From positions 460,566-524,565 of the IMG/VR virus record IMGVR_UViG_3300027749_002876: DNA of 64,000 nt. One strand, 5' to 3'. Below, piece after piece: positions 1,858-55,230 of the stretch. Under the pieces are notes generated by a model. It had not been told where the DNA came from. It worked only from the letters and a program-made list of their open reading frames with translations, and ran no database searches. How positions within the stretch are numbered: the stretch's first letter is position 1; every line of letters begins with the position of its first letter. A program made the position numbers and the translations under genes.

Positions 1858-2130
1858 TTACACCAAGTCAACTTGGACTTGTTTACCACGGATTGTATGA
1901 CCTAGGCCTGTAGGAACTTCCTCATTTTTACGTTTTGCTTCATAACGCAAATAAGACAATTTAATTAGTGCATCCCAGCAAGTAGCACGGGCGTTTACCG
2001 TAGCAAACATTTCCGTCATTTGCTGGACCGTCATATACATACCGATATCGTTTTCGGATCCGTCACCCTTGAAAATTACACGGAATTTTTGTGAGTTATT
2101 AAATCCGTCAATGATAGTTTTTGTACGCAT
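1858..2130 (-). CDS. Small early hypothetical protein
   Basis: 90-aa ORF between two promoter cassettes, AAGGA RBS. Confidence 0.7.
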   Translation of the reverse strand: MRTKTIIDGFNNSQKFRVIFKGDGSENDIGMYMTVQQMTEMFATVNARATCWDALIKLSYLRYEAKRKNEEVPTGLGHTIRGKQVQVDLV

Positions 2131-14477: not shown

Positions 14478-16009
14478 CTATTTTGGTTACCCTTTTGAAT
14501 TTTAATGTAATCTTCAATTTGGTAACGCTCATTGTCTGACAACAATTCTGGGTCATACTCGCCCTTTGCAATCATATCAATAAGGTAATCAATGTATTTG
14601 GTATTGTACAAGTATGTATTGCTAGAAGTTTTGGCAATTTCAATCCAATTTTGTCCATCAAATTTGTAAACTTTATTGGGTAATACATCTACACGGGTGA
14701 ACACATCACCTTTATCCGAGGAATCAGGAAACTTTGGTCCAAACCCACTGGTAATCTGTTTACCCGAATCTACTGAGATTTTTAAGAATTCCGGATGCAT
14801 ACTGAATAATGCTTCTTTTTGCATATGTTTACCTTCGTATGCAACATATCCGCCTGGTAATTCTTTAAACGGTAAATCCTGTTTTACCAACATAGTGTGA
14901 TCCTCATCTGCTGTGAGTTCAACATCAGGTTCTTTTGTAGCAACCATTGGCTTAGTATCAAAATGAACGAATGGTTTATTCAAATATGGATGTTGTTTTA
15001 GTATTGATTCTTCTTCAAAAGGACCATCACTAACGTCACATAATTTATTTGGGCAAAATAGACCGATGCCAGTAGCATTTATCAATTCAGTACCACACAT
15101 ATAACAGTTGATTGGTTCATTAACCGATTCTTTAATCTGTACAATTTGGCCATCTGTTAATGGCCCATCATCAGGTTCATATGCTGGTTCTGTGACAGTG
15201 GGAGTTGATACTGGTTCAGTCCCTAGAGGGCTGTCACCCTCCTCATCCCATTCTTTACTTGCATTGGCAGCTAATACTAAAGCAATAGCTAAAGGATCAA
15301 ATACAATAACAAGTAAAATAATAACCCAACGCACTGATGCCTCTAACATATTGGTATCAGCGTTGTCACCATATATCAACGCGGCAATGTATTTTATCGG
15401 ACCGACTTCTGCCTCAACCTTGCGTACCTCGGAAGCAATAGGGGCTCGTTCTTCATTAAGTATTGTAATTTTTTTCTGTTCGGCTTCAATCTCAGCAAGG
15501 AGACGCCCACGTTCCTTTTGTTGACCCCTACGTACAGCCACGGCCTTATCTGCACCCGTTTCTGTTGTACTTCGACCCATAATTTGGTCCACTGCCTCAT
15601 CCATTTGTTTGAGAGCTTTGCGATTAACATCTATATTTTCCTTTGATATTTTAATCTTCTCATCGTATAATGCAATCTTAGATTGTACATCACCTGAGGT
15701 AACACCTTGTTCCATGTGTGCTTTGCTTAAGAAGCCAAAGATACCCATGCTTGTTAATAGTGCAAGTGCAATAACAGCAGGTACAAGATATAGTTTAAGT
15801 AAGAAGCCGGCACGATTCCAATACTTACGTAGCCAAACAGTTGTGGTAATCTTACCTATTTCAAGGATACCGCCCATGATGATAACAGGAACAACCGCAC
15901 CTGCAAAGATGGCGGTTAATCCAATGATACTATACCAGGCTGCGACTGAGCTAAGTGCAAGAGCAACCAATAGTGTAAGATTTGAGAATGATAGAAATTT
16001 TAAGCGCAT
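14474..16009 (-). CDS. Multi-pass membrane protein with coiled coil
   Basis: Three N-terminal TM segments, coiled coil, TM IILLVIVFDPLAIALVLAA, CxxC...CPxxxC motif. Confidence 0.7.
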   Translation of the reverse strand: MRLKFLSFSNLTLLVALALSSVAAWYSIIGLTAIFAGAVVPVIIMGGILEIGKITTTVWLRKYWNRAGFLLKLYLVPAVIALALLTSMGIFGFLSKAHMEQGVTSGDVQSKIALYDEKIKISKENIDVNRKALKQMDEAVDQIMGRSTTETGADKAVAVRRGQQKERGRLLAEIEAEQKKITILNEERAPIASEVRKVEAEVGPIKYIAALIYGDNADTNMLEASVRWVIILLVIVFDPLAIALVLAANASKEWDEEGDSPLGTEPVSTPTVTEPAYEPDDGPLTDGQIVQIKESVNEPINCYMCGTELINATGIGLFCPNKLCDVSDGPFEEESILKQHPYLNKPFVHFDTKPMVATKEPDVELTADEDHTMLVKQDLPFKELPGGYVAYEGKHMQKEALFSMHPEFLKISVDSGKQITSGFGPKFPDSSDKGDVFTRVDVLPNKVYKFDGQNWIEIAKTSSNTYLYNTKYIDYLIDMIAKGEYDPELLSDNERYQIEDYIKIQKGNQNS

Positions 16010-39573: not shown

Positions 39574-40272
39574 CAAAAAACCCATAACCTCTTCTTTATT
39601 AAGAATTAAATTAAATGGATCAGTTTTAATAGATTTTTCTCCTAAATATTTGAATTTTGTATTGTAGATTTTTTCCATGTCTGAATAGATAGATTCATAT
39701 TTTACTTTTTTATATTCAATATTGTGTAATATTATAGACAAATTCTTTTCCCATAATAGGTGACTATTATAAATTTCAGTTAATCCATTATTCAGACGAT
39801 TAATATCAATTGTTGCAGGTTCATTGATTTCACTATTGATTCCAAATACGTTTTTTAGGTTGTTAGCATATGAGCGGGCAATCATAAAACTTAACAATTG
39901 TTCTTTAATATCTCTTGTCAATGTGATAAATTCAAAACCTATATTTTTTAACTCTATTATTATTTTAGATAATGTTTCCTTATCATAATGATCCATCAAA
40001 AAAATTCTTACAGTTAATGATTGGTTTATATTTGTATTTTTTAATAAATTAAGTCGTTCTTCAAATCCTTCAAATATTTTAAAGTTTGAAGGAATGCTAG
40101 CAAAATTCTTTAATCTTATATTATTGTCATCATCAGTCACATATTCACTGCGATTCCAATTTTCAAAATACTCGCCCAATTGAAAGCTTGATTTTATTTC
40201 TCCGGATAATTTTTCACACAATTGACTACCTGTTCTGGGTAAACAAATAATACATGTTCTGTTGCCGTTCAT
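39511..40272 (-). CDS. Sulfotransferase-like (Stf0/P-loop) protein
   Basis: LPRTGSQ (PAPS-binding-like), LGEYF, LTRDIKEQLLS, VKYE. Confidence 0.6.
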   Translation of the reverse strand: MNGNRTCIICLPRTGSQLCEKLSGEIKSSFQLGEYFENWNRSEYVTDDDNNIRLKNFASIPSNFKIFEGFEERLNLLKNTNINQSLTVRIFLMDHYDKETLSKIIIELKNIGFEFITLTRDIKEQLLSFMIARSYANNLKNVFGINSEINEPATIDINRLNNGLTEIYNSHLLWEKNLSIILHNIEYKKVKYESIYSDMEKIYNTKFKYLGEKSIKTDPFNLILNKEEVMGFLLNKSSGLGVTPALQTLPPML

Positions 40273-41063
40273 TTTAATCCTAAATTTTTCCTAATTTTAG
40301 TTGCACTGATATTATGTGTAGCATCATCAAATATTTCTTGCTCAATCTTATAACCAACATCACGACCGTATGTAATATTCACAATGTTTGGTACAATTTG
40401 AATTTCGTATTGACCTTGATATAACATATCTAAGTCACGTTTAATAAAACTTTTAACTTGTTCGATGGCAAATGGATTACTTCCTTGCCAACCTTGACAG
40501 TCACGTATTTGTATAACTACTTGCCCAGTCTTAGCAATAGCCCGTTCAAACAACTTACGATGTCCTTCATGCCATGGTTGCCAACGACCTAGCATCTGTA
40601 CTGTTTCTTTCTGCCAATCAAACACTGGTCTGCGTCTATTATCTAATATGTGTGCGGCAATAAACTCACCCCACTTTTCACCTTTTTGTTCAGTAATTCT
40701 AAAGTCATATACTTCTGGTGGGATAAATGCTTTGTTAGTATCGTCAAATCTACCTTTATCAATAGTATCAACCCATACAGTCCAATCTGCTTTAAAGTTA
40801 TTACGCATTTCAACTAATGGTGCAACAAAGTCACATATAACATAATCACATTCAATCATATTATCTGCTAGTTCACGCATACGTAAACTTTGACGAACAC
40901 GACCTTCTGTGCTAAAGTCCCAATCGTTATACTTTTTTCGTACATCGTCAGCATTTAGCCAACCTACTTTTTTCTTATCCGCTTGTAGGTGCTCTACAAT
41001 ATGTTGTGCTATATAAGTTTTACCTGCGCCAGGCAGGCCCATTACTAATATTCTTTTAGGCAT
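40269..41063 (-). CDS. Adenylylsulfate-kinase-like domain fused to HxGH nucleotidyltransferase domain
   Basis: GLPGAGKT, LNADDVR, FSTEGR; GRWQPWHEGH, ISATKIR. Confidence 0.8.
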   Translation of the reverse strand: MPKRILVMGLPGAGKTYIAQHIVEHLQADKKKVGWLNADDVRKKYNDWDFSTEGRVRQSLRMRELADNMIECDYVICDFVAPLVEMRNNFKADWTVWVDTIDKGRFDDTNKAFIPPEVYDFRITEQKGEKWGEFIAAHILDNRRRPVFDWQKETVQMLGRWQPWHEGHRKLFERAIAKTGQVVIQIRDCQGWQGSNPFAIEQVKSFIKRDLDMLYQGQYEIQIVPNIVNITYGRDVGYKIEQEIFDDATHNISATKIRKNLGLK

Positions 41064-51588: not shown

Positions 51589-52542
51589 TTAACCGTAGGC
51601 TGCGGCTGCTAATTGGGTTCTAGCAGTACCTACACCAGTAGTGTCACTAGCAACTACACCTGTATTACTTACTAGATTGGTTGTTGATACTGCAACAGTT
51701 GTAGTACCATAACCAAATATAGCGTTATCAGTACCATAACCAGCGGCAGCTAGGTTATACCTAGCTGTACCTACACCAGTGGTGTCAGTGGCCACTACGC
51801 CTGTATTACTTACTAGATTAGTTATGGCTGTTCTACCAGCACCTCCGCTGGTAGTACCAAATCCAAATATAGCTTTATCTGTGCCGTATCCGGCAGCCGC
51901 CAAGGCATTTCTAGCAGTACCTACACCTGTGGTGTCTGTGGCTACAACACCGGCGTTACTTACTAGGTTAGTCACGGCTGTGGATGCACTATTGTCAAGT
52001 CCGTAACCAAATACAGCTTTGTCAGTGCTGTACCTTGCGGCTGCCAGGTTAACTCTGGCAGTACCTACACCTGTGGTATCTGTGGCCACTACTCCTGTAT
52101 TACTTACTAGATTAGTCATTGATACTCTGGCAAAAGAAGAATTATCTCCATACCCAAATATAGCTTTATCTGTACCATAACCAGCAGCCGCCAACGAATA
52201 TCTAGCAGTACCAACACCTGTGGTGTCAGTGGCTACAACACCAGCGTTACTTACTAGATTAGTCATGGATACAACGGTGCTGCCATCAGTAGTCCCGTAA
52301 CCAAATATAGCTTTATCTGTGCCATAGCCTGCGGCTGCTGGTCCGAATCTAGCAGTACCTACTCCTGCAGTATCAGTTGCTACTACACCTGTGTTTGATA
52401 CTAAATTGGTCATTGACACACCGGCAAAAGTAGGATTACCTACATATCCATAACCAAATATAGCTTTATTACCACTCGGTCCGGGAGAAACAGTACATCC
52501 AGCACCAGTAAATGTTATACCACCTGTTATTGTAATTGACAT
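51589..52542 (-). CDS. Six-repeat beta-propeller-like virion/adhesin protein (paralogue 1)
   Basis: 6 x ~48-aa KAIFGYG-var-TNLVSNTGVVATDTTGVGTAR-xx-LAAAGYGTD. Confidence 0.75.
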   Translation of the reverse strand: MSITITGGITFTGAGCTVSPGPSGNKAIFGYGYVGNPTFAGVSMTNLVSNTGVVATDTAGVGTARFGPAAAGYGTDKAIFGYGTTDGSTVVSMTNLVSNAGVVATDTTGVGTARYSLAAAGYGTDKAIFGYGDNSSFARVSMTNLVSNTGVVATDTTGVGTARVNLAAARYSTDKAVFGYGLDNSASTAVTNLVSNAGVVATDTTGVGTARNALAAAGYGTDKAIFGFGTTSGGAGRTAITNLVSNTGVVATDTTGVGTARYNLAAAGYGTDNAIFGYGTTTVAVSTTNLVSNTGVVASDTTGVGTARTQLAAAAYG

Positions 52543-52551
52543 GTTATTCCT

Positions 52552-53121
52552 TTATTGAAAGATATGATGATTCTGTTCCCCGTATATCTTAATATATTTA
52601 CCAGCAAGCATATCTGCCATTGCTTCTATTGGACTACCTGGATAACTATCACCCGGATCAATCATATCTAATTCACCTTGACGGACATGTACCAATTCGT
52701 GGAATACTGTGCGTAGTATATCTACTAGGTTACGATTTTTAGCATATACCCAAATACTATCATCACCCATTTTATGTCCTCCAGTATGATGATTATTTTG
52801 TGCTTCATCAGTATCCATACTGAGTTCAATACGTGGTTTGTTTTTTAGATGTAATCGTTTACATGCCCAATCACAGAACTTATCAACTTCTTGTTGTAGT
52901 TCACTACTATCACCCTCGTCTAGTTTATTCTTAATCCAACTATCCGGACTACGATGGAATTTCTTTACGAACAAGTCATGTAGTGCTTTACCAGTGATAC
53001 TATGTTTGCTAGCAATTCTTCGCATCAATTTATCAATGGTATTATAATCGTGCTTTTCCAAACTAGGCAATTTTCTTGCTAGTTCTTTTGCGGCTGATTC
53101 GTATAGTTCTATTGATTTCAT
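52552..53121 (-). CDS. Late protein with HExxH metallopeptidase motif
   Basis: Start revised to MKSIELYES, 5 nt after ATAAATA; LRTVFHELVH...PIEAMA. Confidence 0.7.
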   Translation of the reverse strand: MKSIELYESAAKELARKLPSLEKHDYNTIDKLMRRIASKHSITGKALHDLFVKKFHRSPDSWIKNKLDEGDSSELQQEVDKFCDWACKRLHLKNKPRIELSMDTDEAQNNHHTGGHKMGDDSIWVYAKNRNLVDILRTVFHELVHVRQGELDMIDPGDSYPGSPIEAMADMLAGKYIKIYGEQNHHIFQ

Positions 53122-53133
53122 ATTAGTATTTAT

Positions 53134-53224
53134 GCTCACTTTTGATTTCACAGTAGCGAATTGTTACATCAGGCCAGCAGCCGGCCCACACTTTATAACG
53201 CAAAGGTCCTAAGGTAGTGTGTTC
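53134..53224 (-). ncRNA. Candidate structured RNA of unknown class
   Basis: GC-richer intergenic: CACACU/AGUGUG, GGCCGG/CUGGCC, UGAU..ACA/UGU..AUCA stems; loop UUCGC can pair with 3' GUGAG. Confidence 0.45.
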
Positions 53225-54037
53225 TTAATCATTCGTTTTACATTTAGCACGTTTACTATTAGTTAATAGACCGTAATCTACTGGCCATTCTTTACCAGGC
53301 TGTAATTCTTTAGCATTAGCAGGGAAATGATACTTTACACCTGCATATTCTTGTATCTGTGCTAATGGTGCACGAAATTGTGTTAAATCATTACCCAAGT
53401 TAACATATGGTTTCTTATGTGGGAATTGCCATCCAGCAACTTCTTTTGTAGTATTATTAATTACAATCTTGTAGTACCCATGAGGCACAACTACTCCGTT
53501 ACCAATCTTCTCATTGCTAGGTCCATAGTATGCACCTACATAGATAGTAAACGGTTGCTTTAATTGTACTGCCCAGCCACGAATACTTGTTTCTAATAGT
53601 TTCCATATACCACGATTTAAACTACCATGTTGCGGATACATATTAGTCATTAAGAAACTTTCGTATTCTACAATTTGACTATAACTTAAATCACCATCTG
53701 GTGCGGCATGACCTTTGTCATAACCTGTAGCTACATAATCATCAGGCTTTGCACCATCTTTAATACTAGCATCAGCAACAAAAGCGTTTGTACGTGGGAA
53801 ACATCCTAATGCGTTTTCTGGTTTTAATGTATATGCTACATAGACTGGAATCTTAGCAGGAGCATCATATGCTACAAGATATGCTTCACGGCATATAGGT
53901 TGTGATGGTCTTTGTGTTTGTGCGAATCCATATGGACTATGTACTTGACATTGTTGTGGTGGTAATGGTATACGTTGATCCCAAGCAAAGGCATTTATTG
54001 ATAGCATTACTGCTAGTATTGTTAATAGTTTTTTCAT
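53225..54037 (-). CDS. Secreted DNA/RNA non-specific endonuclease (NucA/EndoG family)
   Basis: Signal peptide; YDKGHAAP, ESFLMTNMYPQ, LNRGIW..LE, VPHGYYK. Confidence 0.9.
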   Translation of the reverse strand: MKKLLTILAVMLSINAFAWDQRIPLPPQQCQVHSPYGFAQTQRPSQPICREAYLVAYDAPAKIPVYVAYTLKPENALGCFPRTNAFVADASIKDGAKPDDYVATGYDKGHAAPDGDLSYSQIVEYESFLMTNMYPQHGSLNRGIWKLLETSIRGWAVQLKQPFTIYVGAYYGPSNEKIGNGVVVPHGYYKIVINNTTKEVAGWQFPHKKPYVNLGNDLTQFRAPLAQIQEYAGVKYHFPANAKELQPGKEWPVDYGLLTNSKRAKCKTND

Positions 54038-55230
54038 AATAATATATTTTTGTAATCAACGAAATTTGCATGTCTATCTTCTAGACCTTTGCCGGCAGGG
54101 TTAATTTTTTGTGTTACTGCTTTTGTATCGTTGAAGTTATTTATACTAGGTTTGACACGTGTTTGCCAATACCATACAGCAATTTTGGCTGCAACGTCTG
54201 GTCGTTCTGCTAATTCAGGTTGTTGTAGTAGAGGAATATTTAATGCTGTTTGTGCCATGCGATAATTATCACGACCAGTCAATTGAATGAATCCACGACC
54301 ATGGTATTTTTCACCATCTCCGGGTTGTTTGTTACCTAGTATTTTAGCAGTACGTGGTGCAAACTTAGGATCATATTTTTTAGCAAAATAGTTTGGACCC
54401 ATGCTTTTTTCTTTTAACCTACTGAAGTTCCAAGATTCATGTTTAGTTTGACCCATAAGTTGTGCCAATTCAGTGCCAACAATGCCGGCTTGTCTAGCAG
54501 TTTTTTGCATCATTGTTTCTTCTTGTGGATTATTACTTAGTGTGGTTATATTGTTTGCTACAGCTTTAGGTTCAGGTTGTGCCGGTTCATCTTGTTTATT
54601 TTGTGAATTATAATTACCTATCATACTACCCACTGTAGCGGCACCTAAACTACCTAGTGCAAATCCCCTGCGAGATATATCGTCAGCTATTATGTTACGA
54701 TTCTTTACTTTGCTAATCTCAATACTGATTGGTGTATTGGTAGTCATTGCCCTAAAGATTTTTTCAGTTTCACCCTGACCTGGTTTAAGTTTTGCTGATA
54801 TTATGTTGAATCGTAACCTATTCTTTTTAACACCAATGAACTCTCCTATTAATACTTCATAGTTAGGATAGTTAGGTGACAAATCCACTTTGGGATTTTC
54901 TTGTTCTTCTAAATAAAATACATCTTCATCCGGTGATGTTTGTAATGTTGGATGTGCTGTTAATACAATATATGCATTTTCACCATGATTATCTTTTTGC
55001 TTAGACATTGCTACTCCTAAATCAGGAGTTCTAACTACAAAAGTAATATATGGCATTTTTATTAGTTCATGTCCACGTTTAGTTTCTAATTTATGTAATA
55101 CTCGAAGGACTTTTTCTATAGGAATATTACGTTTTGAACCGTCACTTCTATCATTAATGAAGTGTTTGCTCACAACTAAATATCCGTCTGCAAAGGGTAT
55201 TTCTTTATTAATAAATTCTGTTGCTCTCAT
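54034..55230 (-). CDS. MRAxEF-leader modular protein with C-terminal GH19 chitinase/lysozyme
   Basis: MRATEFINKE; AQLMGQTKHES, YHGRGFIQLTGRDNY, AVWYW, TQKIN...GLEDR. Confidence 0.85.
   Translation of the reverse strand: MRATEFINKEIPFADGYLVVSKHFINDRSDGSKRNIPIEKVLRVLHKLETKRGHELIKMPYITFVVRTPDLGVAMSKQKDNHGENAYIVLTAHPTLQTSPDEDVFYLEEQENPKVDLSPNYPNYEVLIGEFIGVKKNRLRFNIISAKLKPGQGETEKIFRAMTTNTPISIEISKVKNRNIIADDISRRGFALGSLGAATVGSMIGNYNSQNKQDEPAQPEPKAVANNITTLSNNPQEETMMQKTARQAGIVGTELAQLMGQTKHESWNFSRLKEKSMGPNYFAKKYDPKFAPRTAKILGNKQPGDGEKYHGRGFIQLTGRDNYRMAQTALNIPLLQQPELAERPDVAAKIAVWYWQTRVKPSINNFNDTKAVTQKINPAGKGLEDRHANFVDYKNILL

What the first reader, a model, noticed from the sequence alone, without database searches (positions are those of the whole stretch)
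53134..53224. Unexplained ~90-nt structured intergenic RNA
Seen: unlike other AT-rich spacers, this one is GC-richer and on the minus strand folds into three consecutive stems (CACACU/AGUGUG, GGCCGG-CUG-CUGGCC, UGAU-GUA-ACA/UGU-GAA-AUCA). A pseudoknot is possible between loop UUCGC and 3' GUGAG. It has no U-tract, fills the gap from the nuclease stop codon to the next late promoter, and lies upstream of that promoter, so it is not the next gene's leader. Inference: small ncRNA, ribozyme or processing element of a class I cannot name.
Basis: partly seen in the sequence, partly recalled or inferred. Interest (0 to 1): 0.6.

Follow-up and report, generated by a model that had tools for sequence, protein, structure and literature searches.

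The report
Phage pseudoknot RNA antisense to 23S rRNA
The 90-base spacer is one copy of a widespread, previously uncatalogued structured RNA of freshwater giant phages whose two most conserved loops are complementary to neighbouring parts of one of the most conserved stretches of bacterial 23S ribosomal RNA, which suggests a phage RNA that binds the host ribosome's large-subunit RNA.

Summary
More than 280 IMG/VR phage contigs carry the element. On 97 distinct copies, all 20 modelled base pairs show compensatory changes (92.5% paired). The architecture is hairpin P1, short hairpin P2, long hairpin P3 and a 3' tail. No Rfam family matches. Complete related genomes of 340-367 kb hold one copy each. 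The element lies 0-8 nt after the stop codon of an unrelated upstream gene, on the same strand, just before the next promoter. The P1 loop (CCUUAGGACC) is the exact complement of E. coli 23S rRNA 1920-1931 (helix 69 3' strand and helix 70). The P3 loop (AUUCGCUAC) complements the adjoining 1929-1937. Other P3-loop classes complement 1937-1944 and 1966-1979. My best reading is a 3'-UTR-borne phage RNA that base-pairs with host 23S rRNA at the subunit-interface region. The structure and the complementarity are shown. Binding, expression and effect are inferred, because no RNA data exist. I rate it categorically new and of high interest.

The parts
53225..53227 (-). TAA stop codon of the upstream gene (Endonuclease_NS, 53225-54037); the element starts on the next base
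   Evidence: In about 50 of 56 contexts a same-strand ORF stops 6-16 nt before UUAGG.
53216..53221 (-). P1 5' strand (CACACU)
   Evidence: It pairs with 53187-53192. All 5 modelled P1 pairs show double changes.
53205..53217 (-). S1: CUACCUUAGGACC in the P1 loop (core CCUUAGGACC). It is the exact complement of E. coli 23S rRNA 1921-1933.
53193..53204 (-). Variable interior of P1. In most relatives this position holds an optional covarying hairpin, P1a.
53187..53192 (-). P1 3' strand (AGUGUG)
53172..53186 (-). P2: a 4-bp stem (GGCC/GGCC, 53183-53186 with 53172-53175) closing the 7-nt loop GGCUGCU
   Evidence: All 4 stem pairs covary and 99.5% of cells are paired.
53176..53181 (-). Pseudoknot 5' strand (GCUGCU, in the P2 loop)
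   Evidence: It pairs with the tail AGU(G)AGC. Loop and tail covary across 11 loop classes.
53143..53171 (-). P3: lower stem UGAU/AUCA, internal loop GUA/GAA, upper stem ACA/UGU, apical loop
   Evidence: All 6 modelled pairs covary. Relatives have 10-11 bp, some without the internal loop.
53153..53161 (-). S3: apical loop AUUCGCUAC. UUCGCUAC(U) is the complement of 23S rRNA 1929/30-1937.
53134..53140 (-). Pseudoknot 3' strand (AGUGAGC) after the AA linker (53141-53142)
53127..53134 (-). CATAAATA, a T4-late-promoter-like box for the next gene (ATG at 53119-53121). It is not part of the RNA element.
   Evidence: Exact TATAAATA is enriched upstream of ORFs in this genome: 15 of 40 motifs.

Best explanation
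The spacer encodes one member of a large, uncatalogued family of structured RNAs, about 75-105 nt long, from T4-like freshwater jumbo phages. It is transcribed as the 3' end of whatever gene lies upstream. It folds into three adjoining hairpins (P1, P2, P3), locked by an H-type pseudoknot between the P2 loop and the 3' tail. Two nearly invariant single-stranded loops are presented, and each contains a YUNR (U-turn) motif. The P1 loop, (A)CCUUAGGACC(G), is antisense to 23S rRNA 1920-1931, which is the 3' strand of helix 69 plus the 5' strand of helix 70. The P3 loop is antisense to an adjoining segment: 1929-1937 in most members, and 1937-1944 or 1966-1979 in others. I infer that the RNA acts by base-pairing with host 23S rRNA in domain IV, on nascent or free 50S, where helix 69 forms intersubunit bridge B2a. 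This would alter 50S assembly or subunit joining as part of host takeover, or mask that site. The following are shown: the family, the fold, the pseudoknot, the strand, the copy number, the position and the complementarity. The following are inferred: that the RNA accumulates, that it binds 23S rRNA, and what that binding does.
For: Structure: 20 of 20 pairs have compensatory changes and 92.5% of cells are paired.
Pseudoknot: a loop's own tail gives -5.94 kcal/mol against -3.86 +/- 0.27 for permuted partners, with 0 of 5000 permutations as low. Watson-Crick runs of 6-8 occur only with the cognate tail.
Strand: the upstream ORF is co-oriented in 179 of 189 contexts. There are 61 G.U against 41 A.C cells, and 15 against 0 at the P2 closing pair.
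Copy number: there is one copy in each of four complete 340-367 kb genomes. The homologous loci in the second genome copy of this record are empty.
23S link: the E. coli rrlH sequence was read directly. The best site for S1 anywhere in 23S plus 16S is 1920-1931, at -22.1 against -15.5 kcal/mol for the next site. In a sample where S1 was not forced, 147 of 159 P1 domains have at least 11 contiguous pairs to 23S 1916-1933, and some have 15-17; shuffles mostly give 7-9. In a sample where S3 was not forced, 108 of 127 P3 apices have at least 8 Watson-Crick pairs to 23S 1900-1990, against 2 of 127 shuffles. These fall into four site classes, all next to the S1 site.
Variants: within the loop cores, CCUUAGGGCC, CCUUGGGACC, AUUCGCUGC and ..CGCUAU keep pairing through G.U.
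Conservation of the target: this 23S stretch is the I-CeuI site and fewer than 2% of known 23S genes deviate from it (PMC2790883).
Against: There is no expression or binding evidence. All 24 sequencing runs that hold the locus are DNA metagenomes.
Some P3-loop classes (GGAGUCGUGCCC, CCGGGAAUCC) have no convincing 23S site.
The canonical S3 match is 8-10 nt, a length that chance alone gives somewhere in rRNA. Its weight comes from lying next to the S1 site.
The S1 and S3 sites overlap by 2-4 nt, so both cannot pair fully at the same time.
In some subtypes S1 is paired in cis with CCUAAGG, or the P3 loop ACGCCA is paired in cis with UGGCGU. Part of the loop conservation could therefore serve internal or dimer contacts.
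In mature 50S the helix 69 strand is base-paired.
A phage needs working ribosomes, so the benefit is unclear.
Confidence: 0.5

Rival explanations
1. It is a structured 3'-end module: an unusual pseudoknot-type terminator or mRNA-stabilising cap that ends the upstream transcription unit and insulates the next promoter. On this reading the rRNA complementarity is incidental.
For: The element always lies directly after a stop codon and before a promoter, either T4-late type or TTGACA-N17-TATAAT. It is sometimes found between convergent genes. A U-rich run follows the pseudoknot in about half of the contexts.
Against: There is one copy per 340-367 kb genome, not one per operon. A terminator does not need 10-12 nt invariant loops. 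The window copy has no U-tract. The match of the loops to adjoining 23S sites is far above shuffles.
Confidence: 0.17
2. It is a self-cleaving ribozyme or a defined RNase processing site that separates the upstream message from downstream RNA. The invariant loops would form the catalytic or recognition core.
For: It is small and pseudoknotted, with strongly conserved unpaired bases. It is intergenic and phage-borne, as many small ribozymes are.
Against: No known ribozyme model matches, even at E = 10. The conserved bases sit in distal hairpin loops, 5 and 11 bp from the junction, not around a junction. The P3 loop exists in several unrelated sequence classes, which a catalytic core would not tolerate.
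Confidence: 0.08
3. It is a ligand- or protein-binding aptamer (riboswitch-like) that controls read-through into the downstream gene.
For: It has a three-helix junction plus a pseudoknot with invariant unpaired bases. It lies 14-90 nt upstream of the next start codon.
Against: The downstream genes fall into at least 12 unrelated families with their own promoters between the element and the start codon. There is no common pathway.
Confidence: 0.08
4. The opposite strand is the active RNA. It would be a miniature mimic of 23S helix 69 and helix 70 (GGUCCUAAGGUAG and GUAGCGAAU in loops), acting as a decoy for a factor or toxin that recognises this rRNA site.
For: The plus strand carries 23S-identical words in hairpin loops. 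Thermodynamics do not separate the strands. From my own knowledge, not checked here: MazF-type toxins cleave helix/loop 70.
Against: The element is co-oriented with the upstream gene in 179 of 189 contexts and there is no room for a promoter of its own. G.U exceeds A.C, 15 to 0 at the P2 closing pair. The loop lacks one A of the helix 70 loop and lacks the UUCCU site.
Confidence: 0.07
5. It acts at the DNA level, as a recombination or homing-related site that copies the rDNA hot spot used by I-CeuI and the L1917/L1931 introns.
For: The position differs between close relatives and empty sites exist. The matched 23S stretch is a known target of mobile elements (PMC1995217, PMC2790883).
Against: The two 23S-like words are permuted and separated by about 45 nt. 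Helices and pseudoknot covary as a folded single strand. No recombinase or homing endonuclease is linked.
Confidence: 0.05

Closest known systems
Bacterial and plasmid antisense RNAs with YUNR recognition loops (CopA, RNA I, Sok type)
   Same: It is a small structured RNA that presents complementary bases in hairpin loops containing a U-turn motif (UUCG in S3; CUUA or UUAG in S1). Two separate contact sites suggest stepwise kissing followed by extension.
   Different: The presumed target is ribosomal RNA, not an mRNA or a primer. The element is not encoded opposite its target. It carries a pseudoknot and lies in a 3' UTR.
Three-stemmed H-type pseudoknots (for example the coronavirus frameshift pseudoknot topology)
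   Same: The strand topology is the same: stem (P2), loop-to-downstream pairing, and a hairpin (P3) inserted in the connecting loop.
   Different: There is no slippery site. The element lies after the stop codon and behind an extra hairpin (P1). No recoded frame is conserved.
Ribosome-binding 3' UTR elements of plant viruses (TCV T-shaped structure; BTE with 18S complementarity). This comparison rests on my own knowledge.
   Same: Hairpins plus pseudoknot(s) lie directly after an ORF, with a proposed contact to ribosomal subunits or rRNA.
   Different: Those are eukaryotic RNA viruses and translation enhancers acting in cis. Here there is one copy per DNA phage genome, after unrelated genes, with much longer rRNA complementarity.
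Guide loops of mobile ribozymes and recombinase RNAs (group II intron EBS1/EBS2; IS110 bridge RNA loops)
   Same: Two loops in separate arms read adjoining parts of one target. The target region (23S about 1917-1951) is a classic hot spot of rDNA-invading elements (PMC1995217).
   Different: There is no ribozyme core (Rfam is negative) and no linked reverse transcriptase or recombinase. The guide stretches are longer, at 8-16 nt.
Intrinsic (Rho-independent) terminators
   Same: It sits at the end of a transcription unit, and a G+C-rich helix is followed by U-rich sequence in about half of the members.
   Different: The helix next to the U-run is a pseudoknot strand. The window copy has no U-tract. 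There is a single copy per genome.

Membership tests
Any Rfam 15 family (including hammerhead, twister, pistol, hatchet, HDV-like, riboswitches, ToxI, Y RNA) | Covariance-model match at or near the gathering score | tested here: not met
   In the window 52000-54500 at E<=10, the only overlapping hit is a chance snoU30 match at 17.6 bits against a gathering score of 45. Eight diverse members gave no hit at E<=1.
tRNA / tmRNA | Cloverleaf or tRNA-like domain detectable by ARAGORN | tested here: not met
   0 genes found in the whole window.
H-type pseudoknot | Bases of a hairpin loop pair with a downstream single strand, supported by covariation | tested here: met
   11 loop classes have matching tails. 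Permutation test: 0 of 5000.
Intrinsic terminator | G+C-rich stem-loop immediately followed by a U-tract | tested here: inconclusive
   No terminator-like site was found on this strand in the window, and the window copy is followed by AUAAAUAC. At family level, 41 of 90 contexts have at least 5 U in 9 nt after the pseudoknot.
Trans-acting antisense RNA | Extended complementarity to a target RNA, above chance | tested here: met
   S1 has 11-17 contiguous pairs to 23S 1916-1933 in 147 of 159 members. P3 apices have at least 8 Watson-Crick pairs to 23S 1900-1990 in 108 of 127 members, against 2 of 127 shuffles.
Trans-acting antisense RNA | The RNA accumulates and binds the target in cells | not testable with these tools
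   No RNA run holds the locus.
Group I / group II intron guide segment | Guide sequences embedded in a ribozyme core (P3-P9, or domains I-VI) | tested here: not met
   No intron model matched. The element is 75-105 nt and lies between complete ORFs.
IS110-type bridge RNA | Encoded next to a DEDD/IS110 recombinase gene at an element end | tested here: not met
   The flanking genes belong to 14 upstream and 12 downstream unrelated families, none a recombinase.

The most novel reading that the evidence does not exclude
Freshwater jumbo phages carry a single-copy, pseudoknot-stabilised guide RNA with a fixed loop and an exchangeable loop. It base-pairs with the helix 69-71 region of host 23S rRNA and so reprograms, blocks or shields the large ribosomal subunit. 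This would be the first natural virus-encoded RNA aimed at ribosomal RNA, and its second guide loop has been retargeted several times within the same rRNA domain.
Probability: 0.4. Interest if true: 0.95.

Novelty: categorically new. Interest (0 to 1): 0.86.

Why it matters
If the inference holds, phages interfere with the ribosome through RNA-RNA pairing at the subunit interface (helix 69, bridge B2a), not only through proteins. That would open a new layer of host takeover or counter-defence. Because the target sequence is nearly universal in bacteria, the idea can be tested directly in laboratory strains, and the element offers a natural scaffold for presenting antisense loops to rRNA. Even if the rRNA link is wrong, this is a large, strongly covarying RNA family absent from Rfam, with an unusual fold and strict single-copy behaviour in genomes of 340-367 kb.

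Tried and rejected
Single-sequence folding gave no signal on either strand.
Rfam gave nothing and ARAGORN gave nothing.
BLAST against GenBank phages found no match, in near or distant mode.
I rejected this for three reasons. Both sides are invariant in that sample. The 2-3 nt linker cannot span a 10-11 bp P3. The tail covaries with the P2 loop instead.
The apparent hammerhead-like words CUGAUG...GAAA in the window copy are not conserved in relatives.
Duplex folding with wide windows was too noisy to test the pseudoknot, and a first tail cut was too short. The test was redone.
Comparing fold energies of the two strands was inconclusive.
A search of the phage's own genome for targets complementary to S1 or S3 found none.
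A first scan of one genome for each of 185,579 bacterial and archaeal species found nothing. A looser scan found two true copies, both in one Haliscomenobacter MAG, plus real 23S rDNA.
Full-text search for the conserved words found only primers, and topic searches found no description of this RNA.
Pfam and PHROG annotation of the flanking genes showed no shared function.
Read laying was not used, because only DNA contig runs hold the locus.

Full report
**Where the finding sits.**
The window is the last 64 kb of a 524,565-bp IMG/VR virus record with 36.7% GC. Genes near the finding are all on the minus strand. They include an Endonuclease_NS nuclease (53225-54037), a 189-aa protein starting at 53121, a family-B DNA polymerase and a DNA ligase. 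The spacer runs from the nuclease TAA (53225-53227) to a CATAAATA box (53127-53134). Exact TATAAATA is strongly enriched just upstream of ORFs in this genome, with 15 of the 40 motifs in that position, so a T4-type late promoter is a fair reading. Local GC is 0.43 against 0.33-0.38 nearby.

**Is it more than chance?**
Judged on this sequence alone, no. The minus-strand fold (-21.7 kcal/mol) has z = -0.35 against dinucleotide shuffles, and the plus strand has z = +0.43. Rfam gives nothing, ARAGORN gives nothing, and GenBank phages give no match.

Comparative data change the picture. A second copy lies at G000:108400-108531, again directly after a stop codon and before TATAAATA, but between unrelated genes. 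About 290 loci were collected in total. Runs that hold the window are all lake or freshwater DNA metagenomes.

**Structure.**
A covariance model built from 19 equal-length copies aligned the others. On 97 distinct sequences, all 20 modelled pairs show changes on both sides. 92.5% of cells are paired, against 66% in shuffles. The covariation score is 0.555, against at most 0.08 when partners are slid by 1-3 columns.

The fold has these parts:
- P1 is 5-6 bp and encloses a conserved loop plus an optional variable hairpin, P1a.
- P2 follows with no linker. It is only a 4-bp stem with a loop of about 7 nt.
- P3 follows, 10-11 bp long, often with an internal loop, and capped by a conserved 9-nt loop.
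- Two A residues and a 3' tail complete the element.

When P2 was left free in the search, its loop and the tail changed together:
- GCUGCU:AGU(G)AGC
- GCCACU:AGUGGC
- GCUACU:AGUAGC
- GAACCC:GGGUUC
- UCUCCCUG:CAGGGAGA
- GCCCCAU:AUGGGGC
- CCGUUGA:UCAACGG
- GAAGCCGG:CCGGUUUC

These pairings are seen. Cognate loop-tail duplexes average -5.94 kcal/mol, against -3.86 +/- 0.27 for permuted partners, and 0 of 5000 permutations were as low. The tail therefore forms an H-type pseudoknot with the P2 loop, with P3 inserted in the crossing strand.

**Strand and position.**
A same-strand ORF ends 6-16 nt before UUAGG in about 50 of 56 contexts. The upstream gene is co-oriented with the element in 179 of 189 distinct contexts. 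G.U cells outnumber A.C cells 61 to 41 overall and 15 to 0 at the P2 closing pair. Fold energies do not separate the strands. Taken together, I take the gene-sense (window minus) strand as the RNA.

Downstream there is nearly always a promoter-like site, either TATAAATA-type or a near-consensus TTGACA-N17-TATAAT, and then the next gene. The bases after the pseudoknot are U-rich in about half of the contexts, but not in the window copy.

**Copy number and mobility.**
Four complete relatives of 340-367 kb hold exactly one copy each. This record holds two, but it looks like a co-assembly of about one and a half related genomes. Long blocks are collinear in inverted order at 62-98% protein identity, for example 15-47 kb with 513-485 kb. 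In the second version of each locus the element is missing. The nuclease homologue at 15155 is followed by a late promoter and a small ORF. The kinase-like gene's homologue in the window (40269-41063) abuts the next gene. Flanking genes fall into 14 upstream and 12 downstream families with no common function. The element therefore behaves as an independent single-copy module, not as general punctuation.

**The rRNA link.**
The two blocks that stay nearly invariant are the P1 loop (A)CCUUAGGACC(G) and the P3 loop AUUCGCUAC. The closing pair of the P3 loop covaries as A-U, G-C or C-G. I recalled that their complements adjoin each other in 23S rRNA and checked this on E. coli rrlH. There, 23S 1906-1945 reads GGCCGUAACUAUAACGGUCCUAAGGUAGCGAAAUUCCUUG.

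The main results are:
- S1 is the exact complement of 1920-1931. In the window copy, CUACCUUAGGACC complements 1921-1933.
- S3 (UUCGCUAC, plus C or U) complements 1929/30-1937.
- S1's best site anywhere in E. coli 23S plus 16S is this one, at -22.1 against -15.5 kcal/mol for the runner-up.
- In a sample where S1 was not part of the search pattern, 147 of 159 distinct P1 domains have at least 11 contiguous pairs to 23S 1916-1933, and 17 have 15-17. Shuffles mostly give 7-9.
- In a sample where S3 was not forced, 108 of 127 P3 apices have at least 8 Watson-Crick pairs to the 91-nt window 1900-1990, against 2 of 127 shuffles.

The P3 apices fall into four site classes: 1927-1937 (the majority), 1937-1944 (AAGGAAUU), 1964-1969 (weak) and 1966-1979 (ACGCCAUUC or UUACGCCA).

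Several loop variants keep pairing through G.U. As an internal control, the relaxed genome scan picked up real 23S rDNA in antisense from two MAGs, which confirms that the S1 word is the 23S antisense in unrelated bacteria. This 23S stretch is the I-CeuI site, deviates in fewer than 2% of known 23S genes (PMC2790883), and holds the L1917/L1931/L1951 intron sites (PMC1995217). From my own knowledge, the R2 site in 28S is the homologous position.

**Caveats.**
- An 8-mer match somewhere in rRNA is expected by chance for any 40-nt segment. The weight of the S3 matches lies in their position next to the S1 site and in their recurrence across classes.
- Two P3-loop classes have no clear site.
- The S1 and S3 sites overlap by 2-4 nt.
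- Some subtypes pair S1 (with CCUAAGG) or the P3 loop (ACGCCA with UGGCGU) in cis. This could be self-masking, or it could mean the loops also make internal contacts.
- There are no RNA data.

**Interpretation.**
The best-supported reading is a phage small RNA carried on the 3' end of an arbitrary transcript and stabilised by the pseudoknot. It presents two U-turn loops antisense to the helix 69-71 region of 23S rRNA, which lies at the subunit interface. I put 0.5 on action through pairing with 23S rRNA. The direction of the effect is open: it could block assembly or subunit joining, mask the site, or tether the RNA.

The rivals are:
- a pseudoknot-type terminator or stabiliser (0.17);
- a ribozyme or processing site (0.08);
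- an aptamer (0.08);
- an opposite-strand 23S mimic (0.07);
- a DNA-level site (0.05).

No known family fits (see the membership table), and literature searches found no description. I rate it categorically new and of high interest.

Noticed in passing
G000 whole record (window = G000:460566-524565): The 524-kb 'genome' contains long inverted collinear blocks at 62-98% protein identity (for example 15-47 kb with 513-485 kb, and 102-148 kb with 432-404 kb). It is probably a chimeric or co-assembled record of about 1.5 related phage genomes of roughly 350 kb, not one 524-kb genome.
   Followed up: partly
window 51589-52542 (-) and at least 15 other places in G000 (for example 218159, 219164, 269735, 276400, 357815, 451969, 518181): The 317-aa ORF two genes downstream of the element belongs to a large paralogous family of about 320-aa proteins at 62-70% identity. 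It has no Pfam match.
   Followed up: no
L297 and L298 (NZ_JBBAKG010000058.1 and NZ_JBBAKG010000001.1): The only true copies of the element found in the scans of one genome for each of 185,579 bacterial and archaeal species lie on two contigs of one Haliscomenobacter sp. MAG. They are probably phage contigs binned with it, or a hint about the host. A sigma-70-type TTGACA...TATACT promoter follows one copy, which fits Bacteroidota poorly.
   Followed up: partly
L294 (Minisyncoccia MAG) and L295 (Pseudohongiella MAG): The relaxed pattern hit real 23S rRNA genes in antisense. Their sequence breaks off near positions 1931 and 1917, the known intron hot spots, so these rRNA genes probably carry insertions there.
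   Followed up: no
window 53119-53134, and many related loci: Late-promoter-like boxes sit only 5-15 nt before the ATG with no Shine-Dalgarno sequence (for example CATAAATACTAATATG). Transcripts from them would be leaderless or nearly so.
   Followed up: no
L229, L181, L206, L281, L292; L261, L262, L268, L269, L272, L275, L278, L288: These subtypes of the element have a larger P1 domain that holds a cis copy of the presumed target word. CCUAAGG pairs with S1, or (AA)UGGCGU pairs with the P3 loop ACGCCA. This may be self-masking of the guide loops.
   Followed up: partly
window 54034-55230 (-): This 398-aa protein has a Glyco_hydro_19 (chitinase class I-like) domain. It lies directly upstream of the nuclease and overlaps it by 4 nt. 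It may be a lysin.
   Followed up: no
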